A stretch of 64,000 bases of DNA. It comes from Mizuhopecten yessoensis (lineage: Eukaryota). The position numbers and the translations under genes are program-made. Below the pieces are notes generated by a model. The model made no database searches. It was not told the origin of the DNA and saw nothing but the letters and a program-made list of their open reading frames with translations. The stretch covers positions 244,105 to 308,104 of the forward strand of contig NW_018406469.1 of assembly GCF_002113885.1 (NCBI RefSeq). The letters run 5' to 3'. Shown here piece after piece: positions 1 to 20,522 of this stretch. Each line of letters starts with the position of its first letter. Position 1 is the first letter of the stretch.

Positions 1-3000
1 CTGCATGCGCTGATGACTCAATTCTCTAGTGGCCTGGTCTGACCTAATCGTAAAAGACAATGAATGCTAGATTACCAGTTCTTTGTGCAGTCGGTACCAC
101 ATGCTGACGTCAACATGCACCTTGACAATGCTTCCACTGGGTACTCTGCATCAGTATGGTTCAGGATTCTTAAAAACCCGTTCATTGATCAGGGGGGACT
201 GATGACAGATGGTGAAGCTGTATAGTCGTATAATACCTGGCTGGAGGCACTGCGCAGTATTAATTACTGTCTCAGGTACCAGTACAGCAGTCATCAATAC
301 ACAGACAGGTTTAAATGAATCACATTATAGGAGCTTTAATTCTGAAATGAGGACAAATTTCAGATCAATAGAAAAATCTGTAGGTGCAGTATTTAGCCGA
401 GAATCCATATATATAACGGTCATAAAACAGACATGCATCACAGTAGTGTCAGATATATTTAACACCGGTGCTAACCAGGGAATCCATCACTATACCTGTA
501 CACATGTATAATGAAGACGACCTGACCTGCCCATATCATATTAACGAAAGTAGTGTGAAAGTAGTGTAATGAATTTAAGTCACGTTTAAATAACCACTGT
601 TAAGGTTGCTAAAGGAATGTCAGATGACACAACTAATCTGGAGGTCATCAAATCTCAAGGTTATATACACCAGTTTTATGGGATTTACATTATACATGTA
701 ACAGAGATTTTCATTTTCTGTCACTTCTCCCATACAACTGTCATGACTGAAGTTTTATTTTTTGTATCGTATTGTAGCATAATCTACTGTAAACCATAGT
801 AAACCCTGTTTAACGTCTGTCCATAGATTTTTTTCCACAACCCAACATTTTATATTTAACTTATACCGTAACTATTCTACTGTATGTATCTGAAAGGATT
901 TTGAAATATTCCCCCTTACGACGTAAAAGAAAACAGTGTGACGGTTAAAGTTCATTTGGCAGTTGGGGTTAGGTGTCAGGTAGTCAATAGGTACCAATTT
1001 TGCAGTAAGTGTCCAGTATGTGTCTACAATCTTCCAAATTCAAAAGGAGACATTCATAGGTTGTTATATATTTGCATAATTCTTTAACTGTACCTCGATC
1101 AACAGTCATGTTTCAAAAATCTATGTACATGTAACAGGAATGCATCAAACATTTACGATATAGCCAGGATACAAACATCAAGTGCTAACTTTGAATGACA
1201 TTAATATGACATGTTTAGTGGCGGGTAATGTTAGATAGCATAACCAATAACCTGTCCTGTCCTATAGTTAGTGGTGAAACAATGTGACGGCACTGGGGAG
1301 TTTTGGCAGGCCATGGTTGATATATCACATCCTCAATACTGTTGTCTACATCGCTTAGTGTACCTTACATTGATGGTGCTCCAAGAAAACTTACCCAGAG
1401 CAGTGTTTCCGACACAAAATCAATCATTCTGGAGCTCTGAAGTAGTGTTCTGGGAGTCAGAGAGCACCGTTTCCCTATCCTTTACCCACGGTACATTCAC
1501 AAGTGTATTACACATTACCGAATACAATCTTCCTTACCCCCCATTTGTCTGACAATATACTGTTACAAAACACACAGAACTGTAAAGAATATCTGAAACC
1601 ATACATTGCAACAAAACTAATGAATTATTTGTTTTGAACATATATTACATACACTTTACACTTCAGTTAATGCAAAATATGGCCTTTAGGTGTTTTGAGT
1701 TCACCAACAGAATAAATAGTCACATTTCCTGAAGACTTTTCAATCATATCACATAAATTATGAATTATTTCACAATAGACATGCCAATATTTATGTAGGG
1801 TCATCATAACAAACCCAGCAAGAACCAACTGTCAAAACAACAGCTAAAACTATTAACCATCAGAATAAACAGTCTGTCTATAAGAGGCACGCCCTACCAC
1901 CAATGAAAATCCTTTAAAATAAACATCCCAAGCCGTATTAATGGAAATAAAAAAAAATTAAAATGATGGAAAAATTAAAATGATGGAAATCTTTTCCAAT
2001 TTACGAAATTTCTCTGTCATCACCTATAGGAGTATGAAAACATTCAATATTTTGAAACAATACTATGATATTACATGAACAATTGTGAAATACAATGTCA
2101 CAATCAGCTCTTGGCAGAACAGGTAATGTGAAAATAAGAATAAAAAATACAATTAAACATAGTATTGAAAAGTTGGTCATTCCTTACGGTGAGATATATC
2201 AATATGGGTGAAGTGTCTGTGTCGTAAAATCACGGTGGGGGATGATTCAATTAATCATCAATTAACAGTATTGATGGAAATATCATCAACTTAAGCTGTG
2301 TTGATAGACTTACTAAATATCATCAATACCACATGGTGTGAGATCTACTAGATAATATTTCAATCACGTGCCCGAGCCCACGTTCTTATGTTCCTCTCGT
2401 AATAATAAATTTCATCAGTTTTAAATCACATAAAATGATATCCCCATCATTGCTAGTACTTGAGAGCAATCAGGGTCTATTTCTCAACCGACGTGTCTGT
2501 TGTGAACAGATAAATATTGACATAGGAGGAAAGTTGGCAATGTCCTATACCTGCTTAATAGAAATATTGGAAATGTTTACTAAATGAGAAATTGATAGGG
2601 TGTATAGAAATTCAGCGGGACCTCGTCATAAATGATGTATTGCACATGCTGGTATTCGAATTTGAAAACATTAAACCAACCATAAGTACTTGAGATTTTA
2701 TCACCCGTCAACACTTTTAAAGATATTAAAGCTCATTCAGTACAACTCATTCAATGCCAGTTTCAATAGAGCTATGTTTACAAATTCCGACTGATTAAAA
2801 TCCCCTCAGGATCATCTTTACCTCTAGAAGGAAGAAAACTGGTAATCCAATAGCATTGCCTGTATTTCTGTGGCTGACCTTGTGATCTCCTTGGCTTGAA
2901 CAGTATGTCAGAGTTTAGGGTACAGATGTTGGCTTACTCAATACACTATGGTGTATCACCTGTGTTCTATGAGTTTACGACCTTGACCCCATGACCATGT

Positions 3001-4206
3001 AACACAGGTTTATGCTACTGATGGTGGATTATAGAACTTATAGTACTGATGGTGGGTGGTAGTACTGATGGTGGACCCGGGTTACTGGCATGATCAATTC
3101 ACCATAGTAAATTTATTGTTCTATGAATGGATTACCTTGACCTCATGACCTCATGACCCAGGTTTATGGTATGGTGGACTCCTGATCAATACTCTTTAGT
3201 ACAGTATGTATATATCAGTTCTTTGGCATGATGACCTTGACCCCACAACCACAGTAACATGGGTTTACAGTTACACCTGGGTTACTCAATACACTATCTT
3301 GATATGCATGACCCTATAACATGTTCATGGTACAAATGATAGGTGACCCAAAATATCAAGTATTCAAAGAGAATATAAACTTGACCCCAGGACTTCGTCA
3401 GTGTGACACAGATTTAAGGAACACATGAAGTGTTATTTTGTTCACCACTGTTCTATGCTTGTATAACTAACTATCAGGCCCCTATCATGACATGGCGGTT
3501 GTGCTATAGATAGGAGGTAATGTAATTCCCTAAAGTGGATTGTTTATCAACCAATCTGTGCCCCCTTATCTATAAGTAAGGAGAAGCATTTATTGGACCT
3601 ACATGTCTGCTGATTATTATCCTCATCAGTCTCCGACCCTAGCTACAGTAGTTCTACCACCCAGCATCAACATGTTGACATTTGTCTACATGTTCAAACA
3701 GTACTAAGAAGTGCATAGTTATTACATATATATATCTAAAATCACTGCTTCAAGAAGTACATCAAGTATATATCATAGTGCTCTAAAATGGATATACATG
3801 TATATATCCAAAATTAAATAATAAGATTATCACACCTGAATATTTCCTCTGTATAGATTACAAAACCTACAAATAAAATCAGTCATGAAATGATATGTTT
3901 AGATACCATGCAGATATATATATATCTAATAGTCTTTTAGAACTGAATTCCCTCAGAGGATCTCGGAACGAACAGGTGATGGGAAGTTCTCAGAACCAGC
4001 TGAACCTAAAGTTAACTGTAACAGATGGTTAATTAATTATCTGATGTAAAGCAGAGATTTAAAGTACCATTTTGTATCTGGTAACCTTTGATTCTGTCGT
4101 TTATCATATTCTAAGATGTACCACACAGCTATAAGTGTCTGACAGCCCTGTAGATCAACTTTCCCTGTATCATAGGGCTTTCTGCTGTGAGTATAAAGGC
4201 ATATTT

Positions 4207-4264
4207 AAATCATTCACCCCTCAAGACACATTTGAACTACTCCAATTCAAAGGTGAATGAGTTA
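4207..4264. mobile_element. Truncated short MITE of the family also seen at 24202-24290
   Basis: Inverted ends tcattcacc...ggtgaatga. The internal ttgaactactccaattcaaagg matches the 24.2 kb copy in reverse orientation. Confidence 0.45.
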
Positions 4265-5102
4265 TATCGCTAATTTTTGTCAATTGTTAGCTAACTTTCC
4301 TTAACTACAAAACATATTTTAGTGACTCAGTTTTCAAATGTTTTAGGTGTAATTATATACTTCTGGGTTTTTATTGAGAAAAAAAGATTGGACACTTTAT
4401 TCTTGTGAAATTAACACCTACTGAAGCAATTCTTAAGACCACCAAAGGGTGTTGATCACCATCCAGTATATATATAGCCAAGAATTGATTCTGAACGAGG
4501 GAACTGTCCAGTACAAGTTCATAAAGAAATGTGTCACCACTACTATAAACAGTACCTGTAAGGTTACATGCCTCCCAGCTGTCAGCACCTGACACAGCTG
4601 TAACATATCATTGGTATGTATCAATCTGTTACACCAGCATCAGCTCCCTACATGTTGTAATCACAACTGTACCACATAAACACATACAGTAGTGTTGGAC
4701 AGAGGCCATCTGTACACAACTCATGACAATATATTTAATGAGCAGCATTTCTAATGACATTCATTCAGCATTATTTTCAGCTTAGCGTGTCACAGCTTCA
4801 CCAGTCTGATTACTTTCTAGTACAGCCTCATTATCGTCACACCTGCAATCTCGTTAGTGCAGGTCGAGGTATTCAAAATCTTCACACCTGTAAAAGTTCT
4901 TATTTCAATCACTGTACAAGCTTTGTAATACACAATTCACAATCGTACTGGGAGGGAGGTTATGGGGGTTCCCCTTTTTAAGGATCACTGCAGGCAATCC
5001 ACTGGAGAGTTCACTGTAGGATTTTGTTTTTATAGCTATTACCTCCCCTTTATTTGGTTTTGGATATAACAGTATAATGCGTAATCAAATGGGCCAGGGC
5101 AC

Positions 5103-5402
5103 TTCCGTTGACCAGGTAGCTCAGTTGGTTGGTCTCAGGCCACTGAATTTTTACACTCAGAACATTGTTGTTGATTGCTTTTCATTTATCTAATCCCTAG
5201 AAGACTTTATTTCATAAAAGACCCCCACTCCCCCACCCCCCAAAGATGTATTTTCTTTTTAGAGTTTTTTTACAGGGATCCTAAAACCACCAATTATATG
5301 GTCTCAAAGTACTGTGAGGTATGTAACGGTGTCCCCCTTGGTAATACACCCATCCTCATATGACCCTGCTGTCAAGAGGACATTTAAAACCACAAACAAA
5401 TA
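5103..5402 (+). mobile_element. Degenerate tRNA-derived SINE with a Meta-SINE-like tail
   Basis: 5' A-box-like ggtagctcagttggtt (about 5115-5130). The 3' tail catatgaccctgctgtcaagaggacatttaaaaccacaaacaaataaa resembles mollusc Meta-SINE ends as I recall them. Confidence 0.5.
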
Positions 5403-7184
5403 AAATTATTAATACACTCTGACTGCAGACAAGCACTGACTCTAAGGACCAAAAATTAATGCATAGTGTTCCTCTTTTCCAGGAAATTTGCTGTTCCAGA
5501 CATTTTTTACAGATTACCAACACAATTGCCTTGTATTATTGATGTTTCCATTTTCTCAGGAACTAAAAGTATAACTTCTAAACTGCTCCATCTGAAACAT
5601 TTACAGATTACATACACATCATTTCAGACCAAGCACCAGGGCTTTCTTGGATTTACAGGCCTAACAAAACAACTAAACCTGATAGTTTTTTTTAATCCAA
5701 AACAAACTAAATTCCACCTGAACTAAATGAAATTAAATTTTGGTATCTCCGGTCTTTCCTCATTTTGATTTTTGTCCATTAGCGACTGGGCCTTAGGGCC
5801 ATTACAGTAAAGAACAAATTATTGCCGGCTTTCTAATGGGCATTTTATAATCCATTCAAACCTGCTTTTTTGCCATCTCAAACACTTTTTTTATACTGTC
5901 TGTTTTAAAGTACATCATTGTATTTACAACAATTAATGCAGAATAATCTATTAGGAAACAGTGGTTAATATTATTCGAGAGAAACTGGCGTATCCCTCAC
6001 AGATAGTGTAGTTCTAGAGAGACTGGTATAAAACAGTGTAATTATGGTCAACTCAGAGATTTCAGACCAAAATATTTAAAAGGACATTGTATCACACTTG
6101 GGTCTCAGATTGGAATACATTGTATATAGAACAAAATAGTATGGTACACAACACTAAGGTTACAGATAGGAAAAGAAGAGAAACACAACAGATAGCTATC
6201 AATACCAGTAACCATTGCACGGCGCCAAAACTACCGTTTACTTACATAGCAATAGCTACACCAACGAAACAGGGCAAGCACGGAAATATTACTGCCTTTA
6301 TTGAATTTAGTTCATGGTTACAACAGTTTTTCATTTGTGCTGTGAAATAATCAATAGCGTTCTCTTTCCCAGGACTCCCACATATCTGCTGTGGCAGTCA
6401 CCGCTAACCATCAAACCTTAGTACAGAACACCCTTGTTGGCTAAAAGGAACAGCCTGACCCCTTGCAGAACAAGCAGGCACCTTCATACAACTAACAGAA
6501 CCTGTGAATAGTTTTGTACTAGTCCCTGCAATTTAAACAATACAAGGCAAACAGTTGTATCAAACTCTAGTTACTGCAGTCAGAATTTCCAACATCAACT
6601 TGATAAGACATTAATTTTTGTTTTGTATTCAATGACTGGAACTTTACTGGAACTGTCACGAAAATCAAAGTATATGTATATGACATTTTTCTGAAGAGCA
6701 TTTTTTGTTATGAAGTACAGAATACAATCACTTTTCATTTATACCACTATAACCGGTAATTAGAATTAGGAGAGGTTCAAGACCATGTAAACAGATCACA
6801 AATAGTGATAGCTGGTCCACAGTGATTGCTGGCACAGCACCAGTACCAGTGATAAATTATGACTCATCCCTGTATTAGGGTTAAAATACAATCAATAGTA
6901 CTTGAATTAGTGATTACACATAGATGTCTAATTAAATTCTGTGATATAATATATACATTTTGTAGATATGTATGAACAGAGGACAACACTGGGAAACTGT
7001 AGTAACTCATCTTTGACCAAAAAAAAGGAAATGAAAATTACCTGGTTATGCCATCAGGTCCAACGAGATCACAGGAAAACTTAAATGTTCCCTCAACTGT
7101 TAATGCTAAATTACCGGACATTAAAAACCATAACTTTAATTATTTTACAACAATTATGAAACAAGTTTTTACAACTGATATTAA

Positions 7185-7370
7185 TTATCACTCTTGTTGG
7201 CCCAGATATTAGCGCAGGGTCTTAATGTGGGAAGAAACCAGAGTACCGAAGAAAACCCACATGGTCGGACAGGTGACCCCATACCTGTTCATGTTCGATC
7301 AGGGAATCGAACCCTGGTTGCCTTGATGAAAGGCAAGTGCTCTATCCACTGTGCCACACGACCACCGCAC
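7185..7370 (-). mobile_element. tRNA-derived SINE with V-domain-like core
   Basis: Minus strand has an A box (gtggcacagtgg) and a B box (gggttcgattccc), followed by gtgggttttcttcggtactctggtttcttcccaca, which is close to the V-SINE core GTGGGTTTCCTCCGGGTGCTCCGGTTTCCTCCCACA. Confidence 0.75.
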
Positions 7371-10300
7371 ATAAAGGTCACAGCATTGTAAAATATTATA
7401 AAAACTAAAACAAATTTATTTCTGCTAACAAATTTATTTCTGCTGACAATGTTTAAATTGTGCAAGATGTTTATAACCAGTAACTGATAAATATTTTTTC
7501 CAAGGCTAGATAACAACATTAAAGTTGATATCAGCTAACAGATTTATAATGCCCCACTTCACAAAATCAATAGGTAAATGTCACATTGAAAGTTTCATGC
7601 GACATTTGGGGATACAATGTTATCTGAAGAGAAATTGATGAAAATTACAGACAATGATAACACAGCTAACCAATCACACCACAGGAAATGACAGTACGAC
7701 AACCAATCAGGTGGCTAGAAATGTAATAGGACGACCTCAACATTTGACCTTCGGTGAATCAGGACAATCCCAGTCACTTGTGAAACATCTATTATGCAAA
7801 GTAGATATAGAATTAAAGTTTAGGTGATGCATGCATTGTACAGCTCAGTAAATCACCTCCAGCTCATTAAGTCATTGCCTGTAGGGAAACCACGATGTTC
7901 CCAGAAGTAATGCATCTGTGTACATAGTATAGTTGTATGCAAAGTATTGTTATGTTTCTGTTACATTATCCACTTGCCAGCTAAAAGGATGCACCCGGTC
8001 TCCAACCTCTTCCCTTAAATCACAATGTGTAGACTTGTATACTGTACCATCTCTGGGACCAGCTGCCCAGTTCCTATCAGAAGGTTTGGGGGGCACATGG
8101 CCCTGATGGACTCCCTTATCTACTGTACTGTCTGCGTACTGGGCAGGAAGTTCACCTCTTATACAATTTATTGGAAACAAAAATAAAGTGTACTTATATA
8201 ATCACAGCTTCATCATCTTCAAACAAGGTTCCTGTACTTCTCTTTGACATCATATATATACATATATATGACAAACGTTTTATTGATGGACATGAAGACT
8301 GGATGCAATGCATTCTAGCTTACATGTACAAAGCTTCTAACTATCAATATATTTAGTCAATTAGAAGTATCTGACTTTGACATGATATTCAGTTCACCAT
8401 TGATCTTCTAGTTGAAGATATACTTGAAGGTGGTATATGATGCACCTCTCATCATTTTTCTATCTTTTGATGAAAACCTGTACCTTTTTTCAATGGAAAA
8501 ATGCAGTGGTATTTAAAGAAATAAGGAAAACAAATACACAACAATTTGAATAATATAACACTTTCAAGACATTTACCTTTGGTAGAACTTAAAACCTTGA
8601 AAGTGCTAATTAGTATACTTAAACTTATAAACATGTATAAATACGGAAACAGGAAGGAAATTCAGGACACAATTTCCTCAATTGCAGTAAAAATTACTGA
8701 TCATTTTTTGTTTTAATTGTACCATTAAAAACTCTGATTCACTGCCACATTAACTGTCATTGATCATTTTACTGTGGGTCACAAACATTCTCATTTAATA
8801 GACGTGCAAACAATCAAAAATTCAAATACAGAGACACAAATGGTCAGATTTCATGTCTTTCTGATCACTTTACACACCGGGGAAATTAATTCAGATGAAT
8901 TGATAGAAATTGATCAGTCGACGTCAGTCTTGGTTACAGGAGAGGTGCTTTCTACATCCATATGATGCTGATAATATCTTGCTGATAATATGTCACCATT
9001 CACAAATATAATCTGTTTTGAATGCTAATGTTTAACAGCCCTCACAATGGAGTAGATCTACCCCAGTACTATTTCAGCACCTTGTTGAATGTTTTACTGG
9101 ATAAGTATACATAATAGATTCTGTACTCTTTCACGGCTAGTAATAGATTCTGTATTATACTTTCAGTATAAAATCTTGCTGATAATATTCATCAGGGTCA
9201 GCATGAAGCAAATGACAAAGACTTGTGTTAACAGTGGTGAGTATTAGAGAGCGAACATGTGGATGGGGATGGTGTAGGGCGAAAGACAGATTGAGGCCAG
9301 GATATGGTCGGGTGAGCATGCAGCATTAATGTCTAAGTCGGCTGTTGGAAACAAAGAATGGACAGGATATATATATATGGGGACTTAGTCAAAGCTGACT
9401 TGGGTACACTATGTCTAACTATCCATATACCCACACACTGTACACTGTACCGTACGGCTTTTGGTGGCCATTTACAGGTTAGACACTCTGAAGATGCACG
9501 GAGAAGGTACAATGTACCTATACCCCTAATGGACCTTTGACTCATATTATCACAGGTCACATATATAAATTCATTTATTTCTGTCTTCTACCTTGTTTGG
9601 GTTGGGGTTTAATGTTAATCAGATACAGTGTAACACTTCAGTTGATGTTTAACCTAGGCCTCCTACATCTAAAAAAGTCCACTGTAAAACAAGACCAACC
9701 TCAACTCATTGTTCACTGTATCGGTAACATGATTCATAATTTCCATTCTCTGCTATAGCCTATATATTTGTTACTGCTGTCTGCAGAAGCAATTCTAGCT
9801 TGCCCTGTTGAATCCAATCAATCAAAAGTGCTCGTGTCAGAATACATAGAATTTATTTGATACTTATATATAAGAAATTGAATTATGGAAATGTTTATCA
9901 ATTAGTTGACAGGAATGTCAGAATTACTAAATAGTTGGATAACACCAGTTTTATTGCATTATATATATATATATATATATAGGGTTGTGGGTTAATTTAA
10001 TGTAAATATATATGTGAAACTTGATAATACAGCTTATACATGCATGTATCTATATAAAGTAAAAGATACCAGCAGTCCTTCTTTATCTATTGTGGCCTGG
10101 TCGTTCTTGTTATCAGGAAACATGTCAGCTATATCTGTACACGATGATTAGATCACATTCACTTGTCATAGGAATACAAAACATACATTTATTTCCCCTC
10201 TCACAGCTAGTACAAATTACCCAGCGCATGCCTGTCTCAACGACTCGGGACATAACACATTGTTTCCACAGGTACAGCCTAACTGAGCTTTAGTCATTAT

Positions 10301-12212
10301 GATACCATCAACATGCTTCTGCAATGGGAAGTATGTGTATGATTATCATTGATAAGACTACAATCTACAATGCCATATATATATAACCATATGAAGTTAT
10401 TTTCTCTACCTTGGTGAATATTGAGCTTTAAGTTATTTAATTAGTATCTTAGTTTATGAGTTTTAATGCAACCAAATTATAAATAAATACAGATTATATT
10501 TAACAAGGAATGAAATTAAACACAATTAACACTTCAGTTTTAAAGTAGTTTTGTTACATGTGTCACAAATGTATGAGTATATCCGTATATTATACTTGCA
10601 GTGTGTATTGTATGACAAAGTAATGACAATGAACAATTAATACATGTCTCGCTAATTGTGTGTACAAGATCAAAGGTCACAAAGGCAAGGAATCTGTCAT
10701 GTCTGTCAGGCAACCAATGCCAGGTAAGTAGACCTGTGTACTGATAGACCAATACTGCTCTTCCATACAGCATAATAAACGTTAAAACCCGTTCTAACAT
10801 TCCTTTTCTTTTGTATTCCAAAGCTTGTGGCTACCTCAAACAGTATACACAATTGTACAAAGTTATGTGAAACTGTTGACTCATCAGTGAATTAGGTTAC
10901 CAGGTATGCATGTAAGAAGTCACTGCTATTTAATGATGAAAATCTGGTATTGGTTGTACATTAAGGCATGTAAATACATGCGCCACCTTTAATACTGATT
11001 TGACTTGCTCTCTTAAACAGTAATTTGAACTATATTTGTGAAGGTATTATATCAAGTCATCAATACCAGGCTTAGAATATCACACATGCATGTAGTTTGT
11101 CAATTTTTATCTTCAGAAATACCCATTTAACATTTCTTTGTATTCACACAAAGGACAAGAATGTTTTTGCAGGAAGCCTATTGGGATTCAATGGAAGCAT
11201 ATATGTTTCACTTCGGAGAACATACTTATACATAACATAACAATATACCCAGGTAATCTACTGAGTTACATACAATCATAGCTCAGTGTTACACTCCCGG
11301 TACTTGGTAATGCACATAGACCACAATGTATGTCACCAACGTCCTCGCAATCCAAGTCTATGTTAAATATGTAGGACTTAATACAATATTCTTCACTATT
11401 GTCAGGTAAATCTCTAATAATGAAAACATTTCCTTCAGACAGGGGACTTTCACCCATTGTCCTGACTCCATGTTTAAGTTGTGTGAAAGGTGTCTCACTA
11501 CCCTTTGACATCATATGGGAAACCTAGTTTTATCAAATAACTGATCAGCGTTAAGGTCTAATAATTATCTGCTGTAAGATGTACCTAGCTATCCCCTTTA
11601 TCTATTCAAACTAACTAAACTGCTGATAGATCTAGAGAAACAGGAAGTGTTCAATTGATTCTATGTAAATTATGTTGAATTTATTTACAAACATGCAATA
11701 AACGTATAACAATTCAGTGATCAAGGATTTGTTTTGAGATTCAAGGTCATTTAAAATAGATTAAAAATCTATAAAACACTTCCACACAGACCTACTGTAT
11801 TGTATCACTCATTTGTTGAATCCACTGAGTGAAGGCAACCTTCAAGGCTGACTTTAAAAGGTTGAAGTCAGCTTCCTCATTCCTTAAAGATATCTTTTCA
11901 GCAGCCAAACTTTAACAACATATCATTACCCATTACTAATAGGCATAAAATAAATGTCTTTATTTTAAAAATTATGAGTCATTAAACCTTAAAAAAAAAT
12001 ATTATGCAGCATTATATAAGTTGATTTGGTCCTCGTTTGTAGGTTAATCGTCAAATTGTTTTTGCCGTACCAAACTCCTGTCAACTCTTACAGCGACTCA
12101 GATATTTATGTAGCGAAATGAGGTAACTATAAGTTTAATATTTCTCTGATAACAACACAAGAATGTGTACTGGATTGTCCCAAACGAATAGGACATTGTG
12201 TACTTTGCTTAC

Positions 12213-12387
12213 CACATGGATCGTAAACTGATTTTATAGCAGACGAATTAGTAGCACGAGCGGACACCTTGGGGTCACACGGGGTCACATATGTCAATAA
12301 CGTCACGGTTCGCCGAACAAAAACGGAAGCATTAAGGTGATGATATGATGCCGGTGTTGACAATGACATCCACCCCTCTTTCCGCAT
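12213..12387 (-). CDS. Candidate alternative first coding exon of srGAP (58 codons + 1 nt)
   Basis: ATG-initiated frame MRKEGWMSLSTPASYHHLNAS...VYDPC ends at TGT G|gtaagc. This is a phase-1 donor, the same phase as the canonical srGAP exon 1. No homology recognised. Confidence 0.4.
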
Positions 12388-12551
12388 CGGAAGTAACTGT
12401 AGTTACAAACGAGTAATAAATCCGGGGTCTCCCAGGAAGGAAAGAGACGTGAGCACTGTCTCAGACGACCGAACAAATGACATAACCATCGCATGTGTAG
12501 CGATACTTTATATCAGCAATGTTCACTTAATTGTTCTTTTATTTTACTTAC

Positions 12552-12618
12552 CCCTCGAATGATAATCGAATTCCAGCGCCAGTTCTTTTTCCTTTTTGGC
12601 TTTCCTTTCGGTTGCCAT
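12552..12618 (-). CDS. SRGAP: srGAP (SLIT-ROBO Rho GTPase-activating protein), first coding exon; the rest of the gene lies left of the window
   Basis: Translates MATERKAKKEKELALEFDYHSR + G|gtaagt. This aligns without gaps to human SRGAP2 MTSPAKFKKDKEIIAEYDTQVK (K6, K8, K9, E/D10, K11, E12, E16, F/Y17, D18, R/K22). It has 67 coding nt and a phase-1 donor, matching my recollection of vertebrate SRGAP exon 1, and it is divergent from FAM72. No exon 2 was found in 1-12200. Confidence 0.8.
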
Positions 12619-12674
12619 GTCTTTATTCGGGTAGATCCTTAGCTGTCAGTTGTGCACATAAAACATATCCTTAC

Positions 12675-12681
12675 CGATCAT
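12675..12681 (-). CDS. Candidate upstream alternative first exon of srGAP (ATG ATC G|gtaagg)
   Basis: Consensus donor G|gtaagg at 12674, preceded by an in-phase ATG (phase 1). It could equally be a non-coding exon end. Confidence 0.35.
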
Positions 12682-13005
12682 CACTTCTCGAGCTACCCGA
12701 AAAAGGTCAACTACAGCATTGTGGGTAACATGGAAATCTCGTGATGCAATCCGGGATAACACGAGAGCGCACTTGCTTAGAAACAACATTGCCGATCAGC
12801 CAATCAGAATCCATTTAACAAATTTGACAGCTGACGTAAAACCAATGAGAACCCAGTTTTCAGATGTAAACATACGCCACATGTACGTAGTCAGACGCCG
12901 GTTTTACGCATGAAACAGTGCTGTACCAAATATATAGTTATTACAGCCATTGATCAGAATTCTCTGTAAGCTACGGAAACTTCTTCCAGCTTAAATCATT
13001 ACAAT
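12682..13005. promoter_or_regulatory. Compact bidirectional promoter between srGAP and FAM72
   Basis: Locally CpG-richer. CCAAT boxes at 12800-12804 and 12842-12846, TGACGT CRE half-site at 12832-12837, forkhead GTAAACA at 12866-12872, and RFX X-box-like motifs ggtaacatggaaat (about 12724) and cttgcttagaaac (about 12772). Lies between two divergent ATGs. Confidence 0.7.
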
Positions 13006-16000
13006 ATGAGTGACAACGCACAGAAAGTTGACAACGTTGCCCCATCTTTCAGACGTAAACAAGTGTTCATCCTTGATTGTGCCTACTGTGATTCTACTAT
13101 TTGTAGACGGGCGATGAGGGCAGTGCTTTTGGCAGATTCGCAAACTGAACTTTTCTCAACTGATATTCAAGAAGAAGGGTGAGTAAAAATTAAACAAGCC
13201 AGGGAGATAAAGGTTGCGAGCGTGCACTGGCCTGGCATATGCACGTGCTGAAAAAAAAACAGACCATTGAAAAGCAGACGACATTATAATGAAATTGCAA
13301 ACAATCACAGGTACTCGTTTCTAAGTAGCCAGATTTTCCTCTTGCCCTGACACCAGACTTGGACATTTTGACAGATAGATGTCTGTTGCGGGACATCTAT
13401 CTGTCAAAATGTCTAAGTCCGGTGTCCGGGCTAGAGGAAACCCTGGCTAGTTTCTAAGTGAAACACAATTTCTGCATACATATTTTTCTCTCTCATGCAA
13501 TTTGACACAATTAGAAACGAACCCCTGTGAACATTTGTGTTAATACATTCGTGTAACAAAGGTCATTATCTTTTAATGTCACCATTAGGGATCAAACCTA
13601 GGACCTAGTTTGATCCTAGGCAGAGGCACTGCAAAAATAATGACGACATAAAGACATGAAGAATTTGGAAATACTGACAAAAATACTCAGTGTAATTCTC
13701 ATCAGCACCATCTCAAAGCATTACAAGAGGCCCAGAGGGCCTGTATCGCTCACCTGGATACCTAAGCAATCATGGCAAACTGTTCTCAAAATGAGATCAA
13801 GGGAATATGCCAGACCCCAAGGCCAATCCTTGTAGCATAGCTATATTACATTTTTCATGCCCAGCAATTTTATGTATGGTTATGGGGTGGGGATCTCAAC
13901 TGTTTCCAAGCTTTGACTCAGAAACGAGGTCCCTAGAGTTGTGGCCAGACCCCAGGATCGATTCTAATATTGTGACTGCATTTGTCTCTTTTTGCCAAGC
14001 ATTTGTATATATAGTTTTGGGGTGGGGATCTCAACCGTTTCAAAGTTATGACCCAGGGGCCAAGTCTGCAAGGGTGGGGCAGACCCTGGGATCAATTCTA
14101 ATGTCATGACTGCATTCGTCTCTTTATGCCCAACAATTGTATATATAGTTTTGGGGTGGGGATATTAACCATTTCAAAGTTATGACCCAGGGGTTAAGTC
14201 TCCAAGGGTGGGGCAGTCCCCAAGGCCAACCTGGAAGCATATGTGCAATCATCTCTTTATACTCAGCAATTGTATATATACGGTTATAGGGTGGGGCTCT
14301 CAACTGTTTCCAAGCTGTGACTAAGAAACTAGGTCCCTAGGGGTTCGGTCAGACCCCAGGGTCTATTCTGATATCATGATTGCATTCGTCTCTTTATGCC
14401 CAGCATTTGTATATATAGTTTTGGGGTGGGGATCTCAACCGTTTTAAAGTTATGGCCCAGGGACTATGTCTCCAAGGGTGGGGCCAGACCCTAGGGACAT
14501 CCTGGAAGCAAATGTGCATTCTTCTCTTTATACTCAGCAATTGTATATATGGTTATATGGTGGGGATCTCAACCATTTCCAAGTAATACATTTTATTGGC
14601 CCCACCCCTTAGCCCGGGGGGTCAGCCCCACCATTTGTACAATTTTGAATCCCTGCCTCCCATGAATACTTCCGACCAAATATGATCAATATCCATGGCA
14701 TAGTTCTGCAGAAGAAGTCATTTATAGCAATATAACCAAATTGCCCCCTTTTGGCCCCGCCCCTCAGCCCCCTGGGGGGTCAGCCCAACCGTTTGTACAA
14801 TTTTGAATCTCCACCACCTAGAGATGCTTCCAGTCAAATAAGGTTGATATCCATCACTTAGTTCCAGAGAAGAAGTCACTTAAAGCAGTATAGCCAAATA
14901 CCCTTTTTGGCCCTGCCCCTCAGCCCCCTGGGGGGTCAGCCACACCATTTGTACAATTTTAAATCCCTGCCTCCCAGGAATGCTTTTGATCAAATATGAT
15001 TGATATCCAGTGCACAGTTCTACAGAAGAAGTCGTTTGTAGCAATATAGCCAAATTGCCCCCTTTTGGCCCCGCCCCTTAGCCCCCTGGGGAGTCAGCCC
15101 CACCATTTGTACAATTTTTAATCACCATCACCTAGGGATGCTTCCAGTCAAATATGGTTGATATCCACTTCTTAGTTCCAGAGAAGAAGTCGCTTAAAGC
15201 AGTATAGCCAAATACCCTTTTTGACCCTGCCCCTCAGCCCCCTGGGGGGTCAGCCACACCATTTGTACAATTTTAAATCCCTGCCTCCCAGGAATGCTTT
15301 TGATCAAATATGATTGATATCCAGTGCACAGTTCTACAGAAGAAGTCGTTTGTAGCAATATAGCCAAATTTCCCCCTTTTGGCCCCCGCCCCTAAGCCCC
15401 CTGGGGAGTCAGCCCCACCATTTGTACAGTTTTTAATCACCACCACCTAGGGATGCTTCCAGTCAAATATGGTTGATATCCACTTCTTCGTTTCAGAGAA
15501 GAAGTTGCTTAAAGCAATATGGGCGAATTGACCCCTTTTGGCCCCGCCCCTCAGCCCCCTGGGGGGTTAGCCCCACCATTTGTACAATTTTGAATCCCCA
15601 CCACCTTGGGATGCTTCCAGTCAAATTTAGTTCAATTCCAACCAGTAGTTAAGAAGAAGAAGTCGTTTAAAGAAATTGTTGACGTACGGACGGACGAACG
15701 ACGGATGCCACGGTATGGCATAAGCTCACCTTGGTCCTTCGGACCAGGCGAGCTAATAATGTCACTGGTTAAATACCAGGCACTTCCTGGCTCAAAGAAC
15801 TTCGATTTTTGTTTCGACCAAAGGGGTTCATTACAAACGTCTTATTCTGTCTTTGCATATTTCAGAGTTATCTTCTCAAGAAGTGTGAGCAGGTATTGAT
15901 TGTTACGTCATTGGTCTGTGTGAGAAAACTACGTTGTTTTCTCAAAAATTGATGAAGTTACTCTCACAAACAAATGATGTAACAATCAATACCTGCTCAC

Positions 16001-19000
16001 AAGAGCAGATAACTCAATATGCAAAGATGGAATTCAGGGTCACATCACACCGTGTACATTTAGGTGTGTTGTGACCCATAGCAGATATGTGTATAAGACA
16101 TTTGTAACAATACCCTGTGCTTCGATTTAGCTAGTAAACCAGAGTGGATGTATTGCCTTGTTACAATAATAATAGTAGATTTTTTTCAAAATCTGCTGAG
16201 TTTTATTTATATGAAACTGTGTACCAAGCATGATTTATCTAGATATATTTACCCCCCACCACAACATGGACAGGAATATGGTTAATGCCCTGTCCACTCA
16301 TCTATCGAAAGCATTGTCCACAGCATATCTTCTACGTTGATTCACCAAACTTGGTATTATCGTACATCTTGGAAAGGGGGATTGTACAAGTGTTAGACCA
16401 ATCAAACTTGGACCGTAGATGCATCTTAGGTAGTACTTTTCAACCCATGCATCAAATGATGGATGCAGCCTACCTTTCATGGTCCATTGACTTTGTCAGC
16501 ATCTCCACCAACATAAAGATTTTTGCGCTTAAGTAAAGTTTCTGGGCCCACTTGTATAAAACATCTCAACTCTTGAGATTTCCTCAAGTCTAAGATTTCC
16601 CATAGACAATACATTGCTTGAGATTTTCCTTAACTTTGAGATGTTTTAAACAAGTGGGCCCTGATATGTGCATTGATTGTCAAATGGCTTGAATGGCTTG
16701 TTATTGTTGTAGGGAGTTATCATAACCTGTACATACATAGACTACATATGAATGCTTAGCATAAACTGGTAATGAATTGTCTTTGAAGATAAATGTTGCT
16801 TATTTGAGACAAGTTAAAAAAAACACTTACAACTTCACTCTAAATTGACATTGCCACAAGACGAACATCATGTTCAGCAGGGTAAAGGGAGACAATTCTT
16901 TGAAAAAAAGTTGATTGGTACATGTATAAAAAAAAAAGCTAACTTAGGGTGATATATATAAAATATGAAATAAAAATCCATGTTTTTCAAGCAAAAATGT
17001 TTTAAAAAAAACAAATTGCAAGTTAATGAAATGACAAAAAAATGAATAAACACTCCTTTTAAAGAGTTTGGTATGTGAAGTAGCACGTTTTTCTTAAAAA
17101 GGTTAATTATAAGTTTATAAAATAATCACTGAAAAATTGATCTATTGACTTGCATTAAAACTAAACTACAGGTTGTGCAGTATTTGTATTAATGTTACCA
17201 TATCAAATAGATAAACTGCAGGGGATGCCAAACATATGACAGATATGTCTTGTGTACCTCATTATTATTCAGTGTTGGGTACAACTAGCACTTACTACGT
17301 CCCGAATATTTTTACTGTTTAGGGCATGTATACAACAGGAAATGAGTTTCCACCCATAAAGTTCAGTTCTAAAGTATGGCTAACTATAAGTATACATGTA
17401 TCTATACCAGTGTTGGCACTATCCTTTCTTTAATATAATGTCATACTATCTATAAATCAAGAGATATCTTTAAAGTGTTTCAAATTCTTTTACTCATTGG
17501 TTTAACAATTGGTGGTTTAATTTGCAATTAATATCTAGAGATAGGGACTGGCTATATAGCTACCTGCCCCTAGTTTTTATGAAGAATTTCCCGGCTGCAT
17601 TTTACTACTAGCTTATCTCCCCTTAGTTTGAGAATCGGACATGTATGCAAGTGATCAAAATTATTAGATTTTTTTTAATAATTCAATATTCTAGAGACAG
17701 GGTCGGTCTAACCTTGCCTGCACAGTAAATAAGTAACCTGGTCTGTTTGTTAATAAGTAAATAACATTATAAAGGACATTTATTCAGAAGTTATCTGTGG
17801 AGAAAGGTAGTACTGCTTGTAGTGTTTAACAAATTTGTTCAACACTGTGACAGTTTGAACCAACAAAATAAGATCTGTTTACCATGTTGTTGTTTCAGCG
17901 CTGTGGACATGACAGACGAGAAGTTTTATACAGACAACTGTGACTGTCTCATAGAACATATGGCATGTACAGCATGGTATGTATATATATCAAAACTTTG
18001 TCGGTAACAATTTTTAGAATTTTTTCTTGGCTTTTAAAAACTATGTACTTAAGAGGAGCTTATATACTGTTTTGCACTGATTCATTCATCTCTCCTGATT
18101 AATTTGCTTATTACGCCTAGTTATAGTGCAGCCACCTTTATAAATTTATGTATACTGTCGAAAGTGGCTGGATTAATTGTAAAACAGCTGGATCACTGTG
18201 ACACTTCCAAGCAGAATTAGGCAAATCTGTTCCTCCTAAACACAGACACATGGTGGCTTTATTGACAAGGCTCAACAACATATCTTTTAAGAAAAAAATA
18301 GGAAGTACATCAAGTCACCTGTATCATTTTAGTGATCGACTTGGGGCACATAAATAAAGCCTGTTATCTCCTCCATTTTCATTATTTGGTTTCTTCAACA
18401 CATTCCAACAGTTCCATATTTAGAAATGCAGCTTTCTCCCTCTACTGTTTAGTCTACTGACTTTACCTCTCTGACTTACATGGTGTTTACAATTTTATTA
18501 TTGCATCAGTTTCGTGCGATTCAGTGGTAACAATTTTGTTGAGTAACATACATTTTCTATCCGATTCGGTGGTAATGTTGTTGGGTCACATACATTTTCT
18601 ATCCGATTCAGTGGTAATGTTGTTGGGTAACTTACATTTTCTATCCGATTCATTGGTAATGTTGTTGGGTAACATACATTTTCTATCCGATTCAGTGGTA
18701 ATGTTGTTGGGTAACATACATTCTCTATCCGATTCAGTGGTAATGTTGTTGAGTAACATACATTTTCTATCCAATTCAGTGGTAATGTTGTTGAGTAACA
18801 TACATTTTCTATCCAATTCAGTGGTAATGTTGTTGGGTAACATACATTTTCTATCCTATTCAGTGGTAATGTTGTTGGGTAACATACATTTGCTATCCGA
18901 TTCAGTGGTAATGTTGTTGGGTAACATTCATTTTCTATCCGATTCAGTGGTAATGTTGTTGGGTAACATCCATTTTCTATCCGATTCAGTGGTAATGTTG

Positions 19001-20522
19001 TTGGGTAACATCCATTTTCTATCCGATTCAGTGGTAATGTTGTTGAGTAACATACATTTTCTATCCAATTCAGTGGTAATGTTGTTGAGTAACATACATT
19101 TTCTATCCAATTCAGTGGTAATGTTGTTGAGTAACATACATTTTCTATCCAATTCAGTGGTAATGTTGTTGGGTAACATACATTTTCTATCCTATTCAGT
19201 GGTAATGTTGTTGGGTAACATACATTTGCTATCCGATTCAGTGGTAATGTTGTTGGGTAACATCCATTTTCTATCCGATTCAGTGGTAATGTTGTTGGGT
19301 ACCATACATTTTCTATCCGATTCAGTGGTAATGTTGTTAGGTAACATACATTTTCTTTCCGATTCAGTGGTAATGTTGTTGGGTAACATACATTTGCTAT
19401 CCGATTCAGTGGTAATGTTGTTGGGTAACATACTTTTTCTATCCGATTCAGTGGTAATGTTGTTGGGTACCATACATTTTCTATCCGATTCAGTGGTAAT
19501 GTTGTGTAACATACATTTTCTATCCGATTCAGTGGTAATGTTGTTGGGTACCATATTCGGATGCCCTGTATAAAGTGCATCAAGTCCTGTAACAACGGCC
19601 ACATGTGGATGTTCTACAGACACGCCATCACACCCAAGGACAGACTCAACACACAAGGTCAGTATTGATAAACCAACCATATCAAACAACTTCACCAAAT
19701 CTCTCATACATAACCGTCACTTCACAATGTTTCCTACATGCTACTCTGTATACATGTCTGACCAGATCAATTGTTTGTACATGTATTTGTTAGGATACAG
19801 TCTCAAGATGACGAACTGTAAAGGTGTTTTTTTTTGTGAGGTTCTAATTATTCAAAACTTTTGCGGAAATATTTTTTTCCACAAAAAACTACAATAAATA
19901 GGAAATTACTCCATCTTCATCATAGTTCATTGTGCCATGGCCACTAGACTTGGAGGCTGTTAAATAGGTCATGCGAAATTGATCATTTTTCACAACTCTG
20001 TGAAAATTAAGCACCACTAAAAAAGGACTTTTACAGTGCAGTTGACAACTACATGTGCTTGCGATTGTTGATGAATATATACATATATATAGTCTTGAAA
20101 TTCTCTTTATTTGTATATCAATAATAATGTGTCTCCTTCCATCCCACTTATACTTGATTTTTAAGCATTCAATGAATTTTGAGTAAGTACTGTTTTGCAA
20201 ATGGAATTATGCTAAAACAACAAAGTGAAATAATATTTAAAATATGGTTGTAACTTTGACCTTATCAAACATGTTAATTAGAAAGTGTACTAAGGTACGG
20301 TGAAACACATACAAAAATAAGTAGTACTGCCATATATATATATATGTAGGAAGTTTAGAAAGAACGTGAATGTTCAAAATACTGTCAAAAAGTTTGAGTT
20401 GTGGGGTGACACTTACTCTTTGCTATTCTTATACAGGGGAGAAGGTGATGGTGTGGGGTGACATTCCCACTGAGCACCACGACCATGCTGCTGGGATGCT
20501 GCAGGATGAGTGTTGTCGCTAG
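13006..20522 (+). CDS. FAM72: FAM72 family protein, 153 aa, 4 exons: 13006-13178, 17899-17976, 19533-19657, 20437-20522
   Basis: Spliced translation is MSDNAQKVDNVAPSFRRKQVFILDCAYCDSTICRRAMRAVLLADSQTELFSTDIQEEGAVDMTDEKFYTDNCDCLIEHMACTACGNVVGYHIRMPCIKCIKSCNNGHMWMFYRHAITPKDRLNTQGEKVMVWGDIPTEHHDHAAGMLQDECCR*. It matches FAM72A motifs (RGMKAVLLAD, LFSTD, CGNIVGYH, SCNNGHFWMF, LLWGNLP, ECIR*). All introns are GT-AG and phases are 2, 2, 1. Confidence 0.96.
13326..13449. mobile_element. 124-bp fold-back MITE with 9-bp target-site duplication
   Basis: Near-complete palindrome tagccag...gacattttgacagatagatgtc / gacatctatctgtcaaaatgtc...ctggcta, flanked by gtttctaag at 13317-13325 and 13450-13458. Confidence 0.85.
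13723..15756. mobile_element. Non-autonomous Helentron/Helitron-type element (HINE-like) carrying internal tandem repeats
   Basis: One end is acaagaggcccagagggcctgtatcgctcacctg. The other end is a gacg/gacgg microsatellite followed by the hairpin agctcaccttggtccttcggaccaggcgagct. Internal arrays are about 120-bp-type units (13800-14585) and about 180-bp units (14590-15660). This architecture is typical of bivalve Helentron-associated elements. Confidence 0.8.
15831..16107. mobile_element. MITE with long imperfect inverted repeats
   Basis: Termini ttacaaacgtctta / taagacatttgtaa. Internal inverted match gtgagcaggtattgattgttac / gtaacaatcaatacctgctcac. Confidence 0.75.
16545..16660. mobile_element. 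116-bp MITE flanked by CTG direct repeats (Harbinger-like)
   Basis: TIRs ggcccacttgtataaaacatctcaa / ttgagatgttttaaacaagtgggcc, with ctg on both sides. Confidence 0.75.
18519..19555 (+). repeat. 42-bp tandem array (about 25 copies) made of the FAM72 intron 2 / exon 3 acceptor junction
   Basis: Unit cattttctatccgattcag|tggtaatgttgttgggtaacata. The last copy runs into the real exon 3. Confidence 0.95.
19815..20038. mobile_element. Degenerate actgta...tacagt MITE (Tc1/mariner-like)
   Basis: Termini actgtaaa / tttacagt with degenerate internal inverted tttt/aaaa blocks. Confidence 0.45.

What the first reader, a model, noticed from the sequence alone, without database searches (positions are those of the whole stretch)
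12552..13178. SRGAP-FAM72 head-to-head gene pair in an invertebrate, with only 387 nt between start codons
Seen: a 67-nt phase-1 minus-strand exon encoding MATERKAKKEKELALEFDYHSR, absent from the ORF track, lies back-to-back with FAM72 exon 1. Established: in vertebrates FAM72A and SRGAP2 are divergently transcribed from a shared intergenic region and were co-duplicated in the human lineage. As far as I recall, the pair is described as a vertebrate feature with a spacer of several kb. Inference: if this is a mollusc, the linkage goes back at least to the bilaterian ancestor, and this is a minimal version of the shared promoter. That would suggest long-standing regulatory coupling between a Robo/cytoskeletal GAP and a cell-cycle/UNG regulator.
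Basis: partly seen in the sequence, partly recalled or inferred. Interest (0 to 1): 0.88.

Follow-up and report, generated by a model that had tools for sequence, protein, structure and literature searches.

The report
Ancient srGAP-FAM72 back-to-back gene pair
A gene pair known for being duplicated in humans, and described as found only in vertebrates, also sits back-to-back on a short shared promoter in a scallop, an annelid, a brachiopod and amphioxus, so it dates back to the common ancestor of protostomes and deuterostomes.

Summary
Confirmed and extended. The window is Yesso scallop (Mizuhopecten yessoensis). A 67-nt phase-1 minus-strand exon (12618-12552) lies 387 nt from the FAM72 ATG (13006). 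RNA contigs leave the genome exactly at its donor. A profile built only from invertebrate copies hits only human srGAP2 residues 1-22 in the PDB. Exon 2 lies outside the window, so the scallop domains were not read directly.

A gene with FCH, RhoGAP and SH3 domains sits in the same position in Owenia (460 nt), Lingula (435), amphioxus (553) and elephant shark (9,629). It was not found within 10 kb in Ptychodera, Tachypleus, three cnidarians or a sponge. A review states that non-vertebrates lack the pair; no searchable paper reports it in invertebrates. The supplement of a microsynteny survey could not be read.

Twin CCAAT boxes are shared. A 16-nt CRE+CHR-like element is shared by annelid, brachiopod and amphioxus but missing in scallops.

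Two corrections: 387 nt is normal for invertebrates, and the human pair's start sites are also under 1 kb apart. Functional co-regulation is not shown. Best reading: an ancient bidirectional promoter too compact to break. The scan had not noted this pair elsewhere.

The parts
12552..12618 (-). srGAP first coding exon, 67 nt, phase 1 (22 aa); donor GTAAGT at 12551-12546; intron 1 runs past the left end of the window (>12.5 kb)
12619..12823 (-). srGAP 5' untranslated region as far as RNA contig X1 reaches; holds 7 upstream ATGs; run X6 leaves the genome at 12692 beside a minus-strand AG (possible acceptor for an upstream non-coding exon, unresolved)
12619..13005 (.). 387-nt spacer between the two start codons; 12601-12920 is 80-98% identical to Pecten maximus per 40-nt bin, the FAM72 5' leader (12921-13000) only 57-62%
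12824..12902 (.). stretch not covered by either gene's RNA contigs (about 80 nt; a few raw reads reach into the bin 12854-12914): presumed core of the bidirectional promoter
   Evidence: contigs cannot fix true start sites
12798..12848 (+). two strong CCAAT (NF-Y-type) boxes 42 nt apart (CCAAT at 12800 and 12842), invariant in an alignment with Pecten, Owenia, Lingula, amphioxus and Ptychodera
   Evidence: 3 such pairs in the window against 0.04 expected
12716..12727 (-). ZNF143/Staf-like site, at a matching position in amphioxus and Lingula; NOT significant against controls, a lead only
13006..13178 (+). FAM72 exon 1 (173 nt, phase 2)
17899..17976 (+). FAM72 exon 2 (78 nt)
19533..19657 (+). 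FAM72 exon 3 (125 nt), preceded by a 42-nt tandem array that repeats its acceptor
20437..20522 (+). FAM72 exon 4 coding part (86 nt with stop); the protein is 153 aa and ends in Arg
3469..10703 (.). ten non-coding blocks in srGAP intron 1 that align with Pecten (73-85% identity, frame-breaking gaps, no codon periodicity): candidate enhancers

Best explanation
This is the scallop copy of an ancient head-to-head pair: the srGAP gene (F-BAR, RhoGAP, SH3; pro-ortholog of vertebrate SRGAP1/2/3/ARHGAP4) and FAM72 (Yippee-like adaptor). [quoted passage not shown] SHOWN: identity of both first exons, their splicing, and the same arrangement in four phyla plus a vertebrate. INFERRED: the two genes are read outward from one open promoter of about 100-250 nt built on two NF-Y boxes. 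In annelid, brachiopod and amphioxus a CRE + CHR-like unit sits on the srGAP side and a second CHR-like hexamer on the FAM72 side. The 5' ends and binding sites of the two genes interlock, so almost any break between them disables one gene, and that keeps the pair together while outer neighbours change. Gene-specific control is probably added on top (cell-cycle repression for FAM72, intronic enhancers for srGAP), so the two need not be co-expressed. After the vertebrate genome duplications only SRGAP2 kept FAM72, and the distance between start codons grew, probably by a 5' untranslated intron.
For: Same head-to-head arrangement in Mizuhopecten (387 nt), Pecten (413), Owenia (460), Lingula (435), Branchiostoma (553) and Callorhinchus (9,629). 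The partner carries FCH+RhoGAP+SH3 in the last four. Exon 1 is phase 1 in all five invertebrates (67 nt in four, 58 nt in amphioxus); the shark exon reads 22 codons plus 1 nt before GTGGGT. The invertebrate-only profile hits only srGAP2 residues 1-22, E 6e-4. The gene on FAM72's other side differs by lineage: CFAP54, zinc finger, kinase, RXYLT1, 7tm receptor. RNA 5' ends come within about 80 nt of each other. TGACGTCA-N-ATTTAAA is identical at 15 of 16 columns in Owenia, Lingula and amphioxus, 79-82 nt upstream of the last CCAAT; the best of 300 shuffles was 11 and of 300 real control windows 12. The human FAM72 promoter is reported to be CHR/DREAM-controlled (PMC7957592).
Against: Scallop exon 2 and the scallop domains were not read: the 1130-aa product has no Pfam hit on record, so identity rests on exon-1 homology, position and length. 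The 16-nt element is absent from both scallops and from the shark spacer, yet the linkage persists there. No srGAP exon 1 lies within 10 kb of FAM72 in Ptychodera or Tachypleus, so the pair can apparently be broken. True start sites were not mapped. Run X6 hints at an upstream srGAP exon that could have its own promoter.
Confidence: 0.65

Rival explanations
1. Passive inheritance: the pair is ancestral but has no regulatory coupling. It survives because a 400-nt spacer is a tiny target for rearrangement and these genomes rearrange slowly. The shared motifs are simply FAM72's own cell-cycle promoter.
For: By eye, a TTTAAA 30-45 nt upstream of a CCAAT also appears before FAM72 in Tachypleus, Actinia, Acropora and Xenia, which lack the srGAP neighbour; Ptychodera has twin CCAAT boxes with two TTTAAA (not tested statistically). 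All spacer CCAAT boxes in the linked invertebrates point toward FAM72. FAM72 exon-1 reads occur without srGAP exon-1 reads in X21. The linkage was not found in two bilaterian lineages.
Against: The CRE+TTTAAA unit occurs only in linked species. The spacer stayed at 387-553 nt in four invertebrate phyla while FAM72's span ranged from about 1.8 to 7.5 kb. The srGAP side of the spacer is 95-98% identical between scallops.
Confidence: 0.2
2. Functional switch: the shared promoter enforces coordinated or reciprocal output, FAM72 in dividing cells and srGAP in differentiating or migrating cells, and selection keeps that logic.
For: A reciprocal model is proposed for rat and human cells (PMC7957592). 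The conserved invertebrate element joins a signal-responsive CRE to a CHR-like hexamer. X21 shows FAM72 without srGAP; in X1 and X6 the srGAP contig is deeper (19.7 vs 5.3, 194 vs 22.7).
Against: Four RNA runs are anecdotal and contig depth is not expression. No shared pathway between the two proteins is known to me. Three of four vertebrate SRGAP paralogs work without a FAM72 neighbour (inferred). The element is missing in scallops.
Confidence: 0.1
3. Genomic regulatory block: enhancers in the long first intron of srGAP, or in FAM72, act across the pair and pin the two genes together.
For: 19% of srGAP intron 1 (3006-12100) aligns with Pecten against 0% of FAM72 introns. Intron 1 exceeds 9 kb in every linked invertebrate (no exon 2 found in the loci).
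Against: These blocks lie inside srGAP and need no neighbour. None of them is found in Owenia, Lingula, amphioxus or shark. FAM72 introns, where bystander enhancers would sit, show no conservation.
Confidence: 0.04
4. The scallop exon belongs to some other gene, or the adjacency arose independently in protostomes and chordates.
For: No Pfam domains are on record for the scallop 1130-aa product. The exon alone finds nothing in Pfam, the PDB or the ESM Atlas.
Against: Same exon length, phase, position, product size (1130 vs 1052-1166 aa) and peptide similarity (z 6.9) as four domain-confirmed srGAP genes.
Confidence: 0.01

Closest known systems
Vertebrate SRGAP2-FAM72 divergent pair (PMC7957592; PMC12672016)
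   Same: Same two gene families, head-to-head; FAM72 has four coding exons; the srGAP first exon matches srGAP2 residues 1-22; start sites are close together.
   Different: Found in a mollusc, annelid, brachiopod and cephalochordate, which the review excludes. Start codons are 387-553 nt apart instead of about 4 kb (human, review) or 9.6 kb (shark). The partner is the unduplicated srGAP.
Conserved ancestral microsyntenic pairs (CAMPs; Irimia et al. 2012, PMC3514665), e.g. HSPD1-HSPE1
   Same: [quoted passage not shown]
   Different: Neither gene is named in the main text (SRGAP 0 occurrences); the supplementary list could not be read. Unlike HSPD1-HSPE1, the two products share no known complex, and the pair was not found outside Bilateria.
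NF-Y/CHR cell-cycle promoters under DREAM/MuvB control (established knowledge; human FAM72 per PMC7957592)
   Same: Paired CCAAT boxes 30-31 nt apart with a CHR-like hexamer downstream in Owenia, Lingula and amphioxus.
   Different: In scallops the boxes are 42 nt apart and no canonical CHR hexamer lies in the spacer. The other three carry an extra CRE fused to a second CHR-like hexamer on the srGAP side.

Membership tests
FAM72 (PF14976) | Pfam score above the curated cut-off | tested here: met
   173 bits against a cut-off of 27, E 5.4e-51
FAM72 (PF14976) | conserved Cys pattern, NNGH motif, late Trp and C-terminal Arg (binds MKLN1 in human, PMC13676621) | tested here: met
   alignment A1
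FAM72 (PF14976) | binds UNG2 and the CTLH ligase | not testable with these tools
   shown for mammals only
srGAP family | N-terminal exon homologous to srGAP residues 1-22 with a phase-1 intron | tested here: met
srGAP family | FCH/F-BAR + RhoGAP + SH3 domains in the scallop product | not testable with these tools
   exons lie outside the window; no Pfam entry on record for the 1130-aa product; met for the positional orthologs in Owenia, Lingula, amphioxus and shark
srGAP family | ortholog of SRGAP2 specifically | not tested
   no tree possible on 22 aa; the four vertebrate paralogs arose in the whole-genome duplications (PMC8851675), so pro-orthology is inferred
Divergently paired genes / bidirectional promoter | opposite strands, start sites under 1 kb apart | tested here: met
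   RNA contigs reach 12823 (minus) and 12903 (plus); exact starts unmapped
Divergently paired genes / bidirectional promoter | the same cis-elements drive both directions; co-expression | tested here: inconclusive
   uneven coverage in four runs; needs reporter or CAGE data
Conserved ancestral microsyntenic pair (CAMP) | [quoted passage not shown] | tested here: met
   Mollusca, Annelida, Brachiopoda, Cephalochordata, Vertebrata
CHR/DREAM cell-cycle promoter | canonical CHR hexamer near the FAM72 start site in the scallop | tested here: not met
   none of five CHR hexamers in the 387-nt spacer; present in Owenia, Lingula and amphioxus

The most novel reading that the evidence does not exclude
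The srGAP-FAM72 pair arose in stem bilaterians together with a CRE-CHR-CCAAT-CCAAT-CHR promoter that survives almost letter for letter in annelids, brachiopods and amphioxus. It acts as a conserved switch between proliferation (FAM72) and cell-shape or neurite control (srGAP). The unit that was duplicated in human evolution would then be a very old regulatory device, testable in a 450-nt reporter.
Probability: 0.15. Interest if true: 0.8.

Novelty: new member of a known kind. Interest (0 to 1): 0.52.

Why it matters
It contradicts a printed statement that the SRGAP2-FAM72 'master gene' is confined to vertebrates and brain-specific in origin. It moves the origin of the pair back to the protostome-deuterostome ancestor. 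It explains the vertebrate picture as retention of FAM72 beside one of four SRGAP paralogs. The compact invertebrate spacers, with a 16-nt element shared across a protostome-deuterostome split, show which sites to test for two-way control. The class itself (ancient head-to-head pairs) is well known, with about 600 examples, so this is a notable new example and not a new mechanism.

Tried and rejected
No srGAP exon 2 in window 1-12551, by frame listing and motif search; the conserved intron blocks are non-coding. The 22-aa exon alone gave nothing in Pfam, the PDB or the ESM Atlas; it is too short, and the profile search solved this. One search failed on my own off-by-one coordinate (the ATG is at 13006). 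A 5'-UTR hairpin (inverted repeat at 12626/12693) folds no better than shuffles (z -1.2 and -0.8): rejected as a feature. The ZNF143-like site shared with amphioxus and Lingula scored 8 of 12 columns, which 164 of 500 control triplets matched or beat: not significant. The CRE half-site at 12832 is not kept in Pecten. Paper searches for FAM72+SRGAP with amphioxus, microsynteny, synteny, mollusc or invertebrate found no report of the invertebrate pair. Supplements of three synteny papers and two further look-ups by PubMed id were not held. Repeats at 13281-13463 and 13708-13800 swamped the loose-end table, so the 30 spliced letters beyond 12552 were not shown. No human contig was fetched.

Full report
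OBSERVATION. On the minus strand, 12618..12552 is a 67-nt exon encoding 22 residues plus one base, followed by GTAAGT. FAM72 starts at 13006, leaving 387 nt between the start codons. The remaining FAM72 coding exons are 17899-17976, 19533-19657 and 20437-20522; with exon 1 they total 462 nt, or 153 codons plus a stop. The full protein was returned by a database search (P0001) and is named 'protein FAM72A-like [Mizuhopecten yessoensis]', a bivalve mollusc. The public locus is identical to the window over 27,517 nt. Its gene track has a minus-strand 1130-aa gene whose 5' end is this exon's ATG.

TRANSCRIPTION. In one search, a contig of run X1 matches 12823 to 12552 and then continues for 30 letters that are not in the stretch. 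In X6 the exon contig (depth 194) begins at exactly 12552, while the contig running into the intron has depth 6. FAM72 contigs cover 12903/12908 to 13178 and then leave the genome. Both exons are therefore transcribed and spliced at the predicted donors, and their 5' ends come within about 80 nt. Contigs cannot fix true start sites, and X1 is only guessed to be RNA. Raw reads of X21 cover FAM72 exon 1 (depth about 10) but not srGAP exon 1; X24 covers neither. The main X6 contig leaves the genome at 12692 with 19 unplaced letters, next to a minus-strand AG that Pecten shares. This may be an upstream non-coding exon; it is unresolved.

IDENTITY OF THE MINUS-STRAND GENE. Exon 2 is not in the window, and the 1130-aa product has no Pfam entry on record, so the scallop domains were not read. 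The identification rests on four results. (a) In Owenia, Lingula, Branchiostoma and Callorhinchus the gene in the same position carries FCH, RhoGAP and SH3 and is 1052-1166 aa long. (b) Their first coding exons are phase 1 and 67, 67, 58 and 67 nt long (the shark value is read from the printed sequence). (c) A profile of three of these peptides picks the scallop exon first among 3,048 candidates, z 6.9. (d) An HMM from invertebrate exons only hits human srGAP2 residues 1-22 and nothing else among 177,635 PDB sequences, E 6e-4. I put the identity at about 0.97.

DISTRIBUTION. Linked head-to-head, with the gap between start codons: Mizuhopecten 387, Pecten 413, Lingula 435, Owenia 460, Branchiostoma 553, Callorhinchus 9,629 nt. 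Not linked within 10 kb, by gene track: Ptychodera, Tachypleus, Actinia, Acropora, Xenia, Amphimedon. The exon-1 profile scan was also blank in all of these except Xenia, which was not scanned. The Tachypleus blank is weak, because no gene at all lies within 10 kb and the shark gap is already 9.6 kb. The simplest history is presence in the protostome-deuterostome ancestor, with probable later losses. Origin in stem bilaterians is suggested by four non-bilaterian blanks but not proven. FAM72 itself is older, with copies in sponges, cnidarians and fungi. The gene on FAM72's other side differs by lineage, so the srGAP side is selectively stable.

PROMOTER. The scallop spacer has two strong CCAAT boxes 42 nt apart. 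Such a pair occurs 3 times in the window against 0.04 expected, and both boxes are invariant across six species. The srGAP half of the spacer is 95-98% identical to Pecten, the FAM72 leader about 60%, and FAM72 introns do not align at all. Owenia, Lingula and amphioxus share TGACGTCA-N-ATTTAAA, 79-82 nt upstream of the last CCAAT, once per 22-25 kb locus. That is 15 of 16 invariant columns; shuffles reached at most 11 and real control windows at most 12 (300 each). The controls were not promoters, and both halves are common promoter words, so the significance is somewhat overstated. From established knowledge the halves resemble a CRE and a CHR. The element is absent in both scallops, the shark spacer and all unlinked species. 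The scallop spacer has no canonical CHR, so it is a derived version and not a 'minimal' one. A ZNF143-like site and a UTR hairpin failed their controls.

MECHANISM. Most likely (0.65) the genes share one compact open promoter with interlocked 5' ends, which makes the junction hard to break, while gene-specific inputs let their outputs differ. Passive inheritance of FAM72's own cell-cycle promoter (0.2), a true proliferation/differentiation switch (0.1) and an enhancer block (0.04) are the rivals. The arrangement and its age are shown; shared use of the sites is inferred.

LITERATURE. [quoted passage not shown] PMC12672016 lists the human pair among divergent pairs with start sites under 1 kb apart and discusses it only in vertebrates, so the 4 kb is most likely a coding-sequence distance. 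SRGAP1/2/3/ARHGAP4 form a genome-duplication quartet (PMC8851675). No searchable paper reports the invertebrate pair. Irimia et al. 2012 catalogued 595 such ancient pairs, and their supplement could not be read. I estimate a fair chance, perhaps one in three, that the pair sits there unremarked. The scan's own notes held no other srGAP/FAM72 pair finding.

VERDICT. Real, correctly identified and older than the literature says: a new member of a known kind. Interest 0.52, for contradicting a printed claim about a much-studied locus and for a testable conserved promoter element. It is held down by the familiarity of the class and the lack of evidence for functional coupling.

Noticed in passing
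window 18517-19555: A 42-nt tandem array (24.7 copies, 94% match) repeats the FAM72 exon-3 acceptor and first codons. 22 exact acceptor copies were counted, including the real one; the four upstream copies translated all hit a stop within 5 codons. The exact motif is absent from the Pecten locus.
   Followed up: partly
L007/L008/L009 (amphioxus) and L011 (Ptychodera), downstream of FAM72: RXYLT1 (TMEM5) lies tail-to-tail with FAM72 in both. From memory, human RXYLT1 lies beside SRGAP1, which would fit loss of FAM72 at that paralog; not checked.
   Followed up: no
L005, L012, L016 (Actinia, Acropora, Xenia): Cnidarian FAM72 has its own conserved neighbours: a small bZIP gene tail-to-tail in all three, and an MFS transporter head-to-head in the two hexacorals.
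   Followed up: no
window 12692: The dominant srGAP contig in RNA run X6 leaves the genome here with 19 unplaced letters beside a conserved AG: possible upstream non-coding exon, allele or fold-back artefact.
   Followed up: partly
window 3469-10703: Ten non-coding blocks in srGAP intron 1 are conserved with Pecten (19% of the intron against 0% of FAM72 introns); candidate enhancers.
   Followed up: partly
window 23395 onward, minus strand: A CFAP54 gene (3529 aa) ends tail-to-tail with FAM72 in both scallops.
   Followed up: no
window 13281-13463, 13708-13800, 13857-15626: High-copy repeats in FAM72 intron 1, abundant in RNA runs; 134-nt and 158-nt tandem arrays.
   Followed up: no
L015:14332-15496 (Lingula): A second copy of FAM72 exons 3-4 lies 3.5 kb downstream of the gene.
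   Followed up: no
window 7670-7709 and 44611-44664: Two further twin-CCAAT arrangements, the first inside a conserved block of srGAP intron 1 (7448-7771); possible alternative promoter or enhancer.
   Followed up: no
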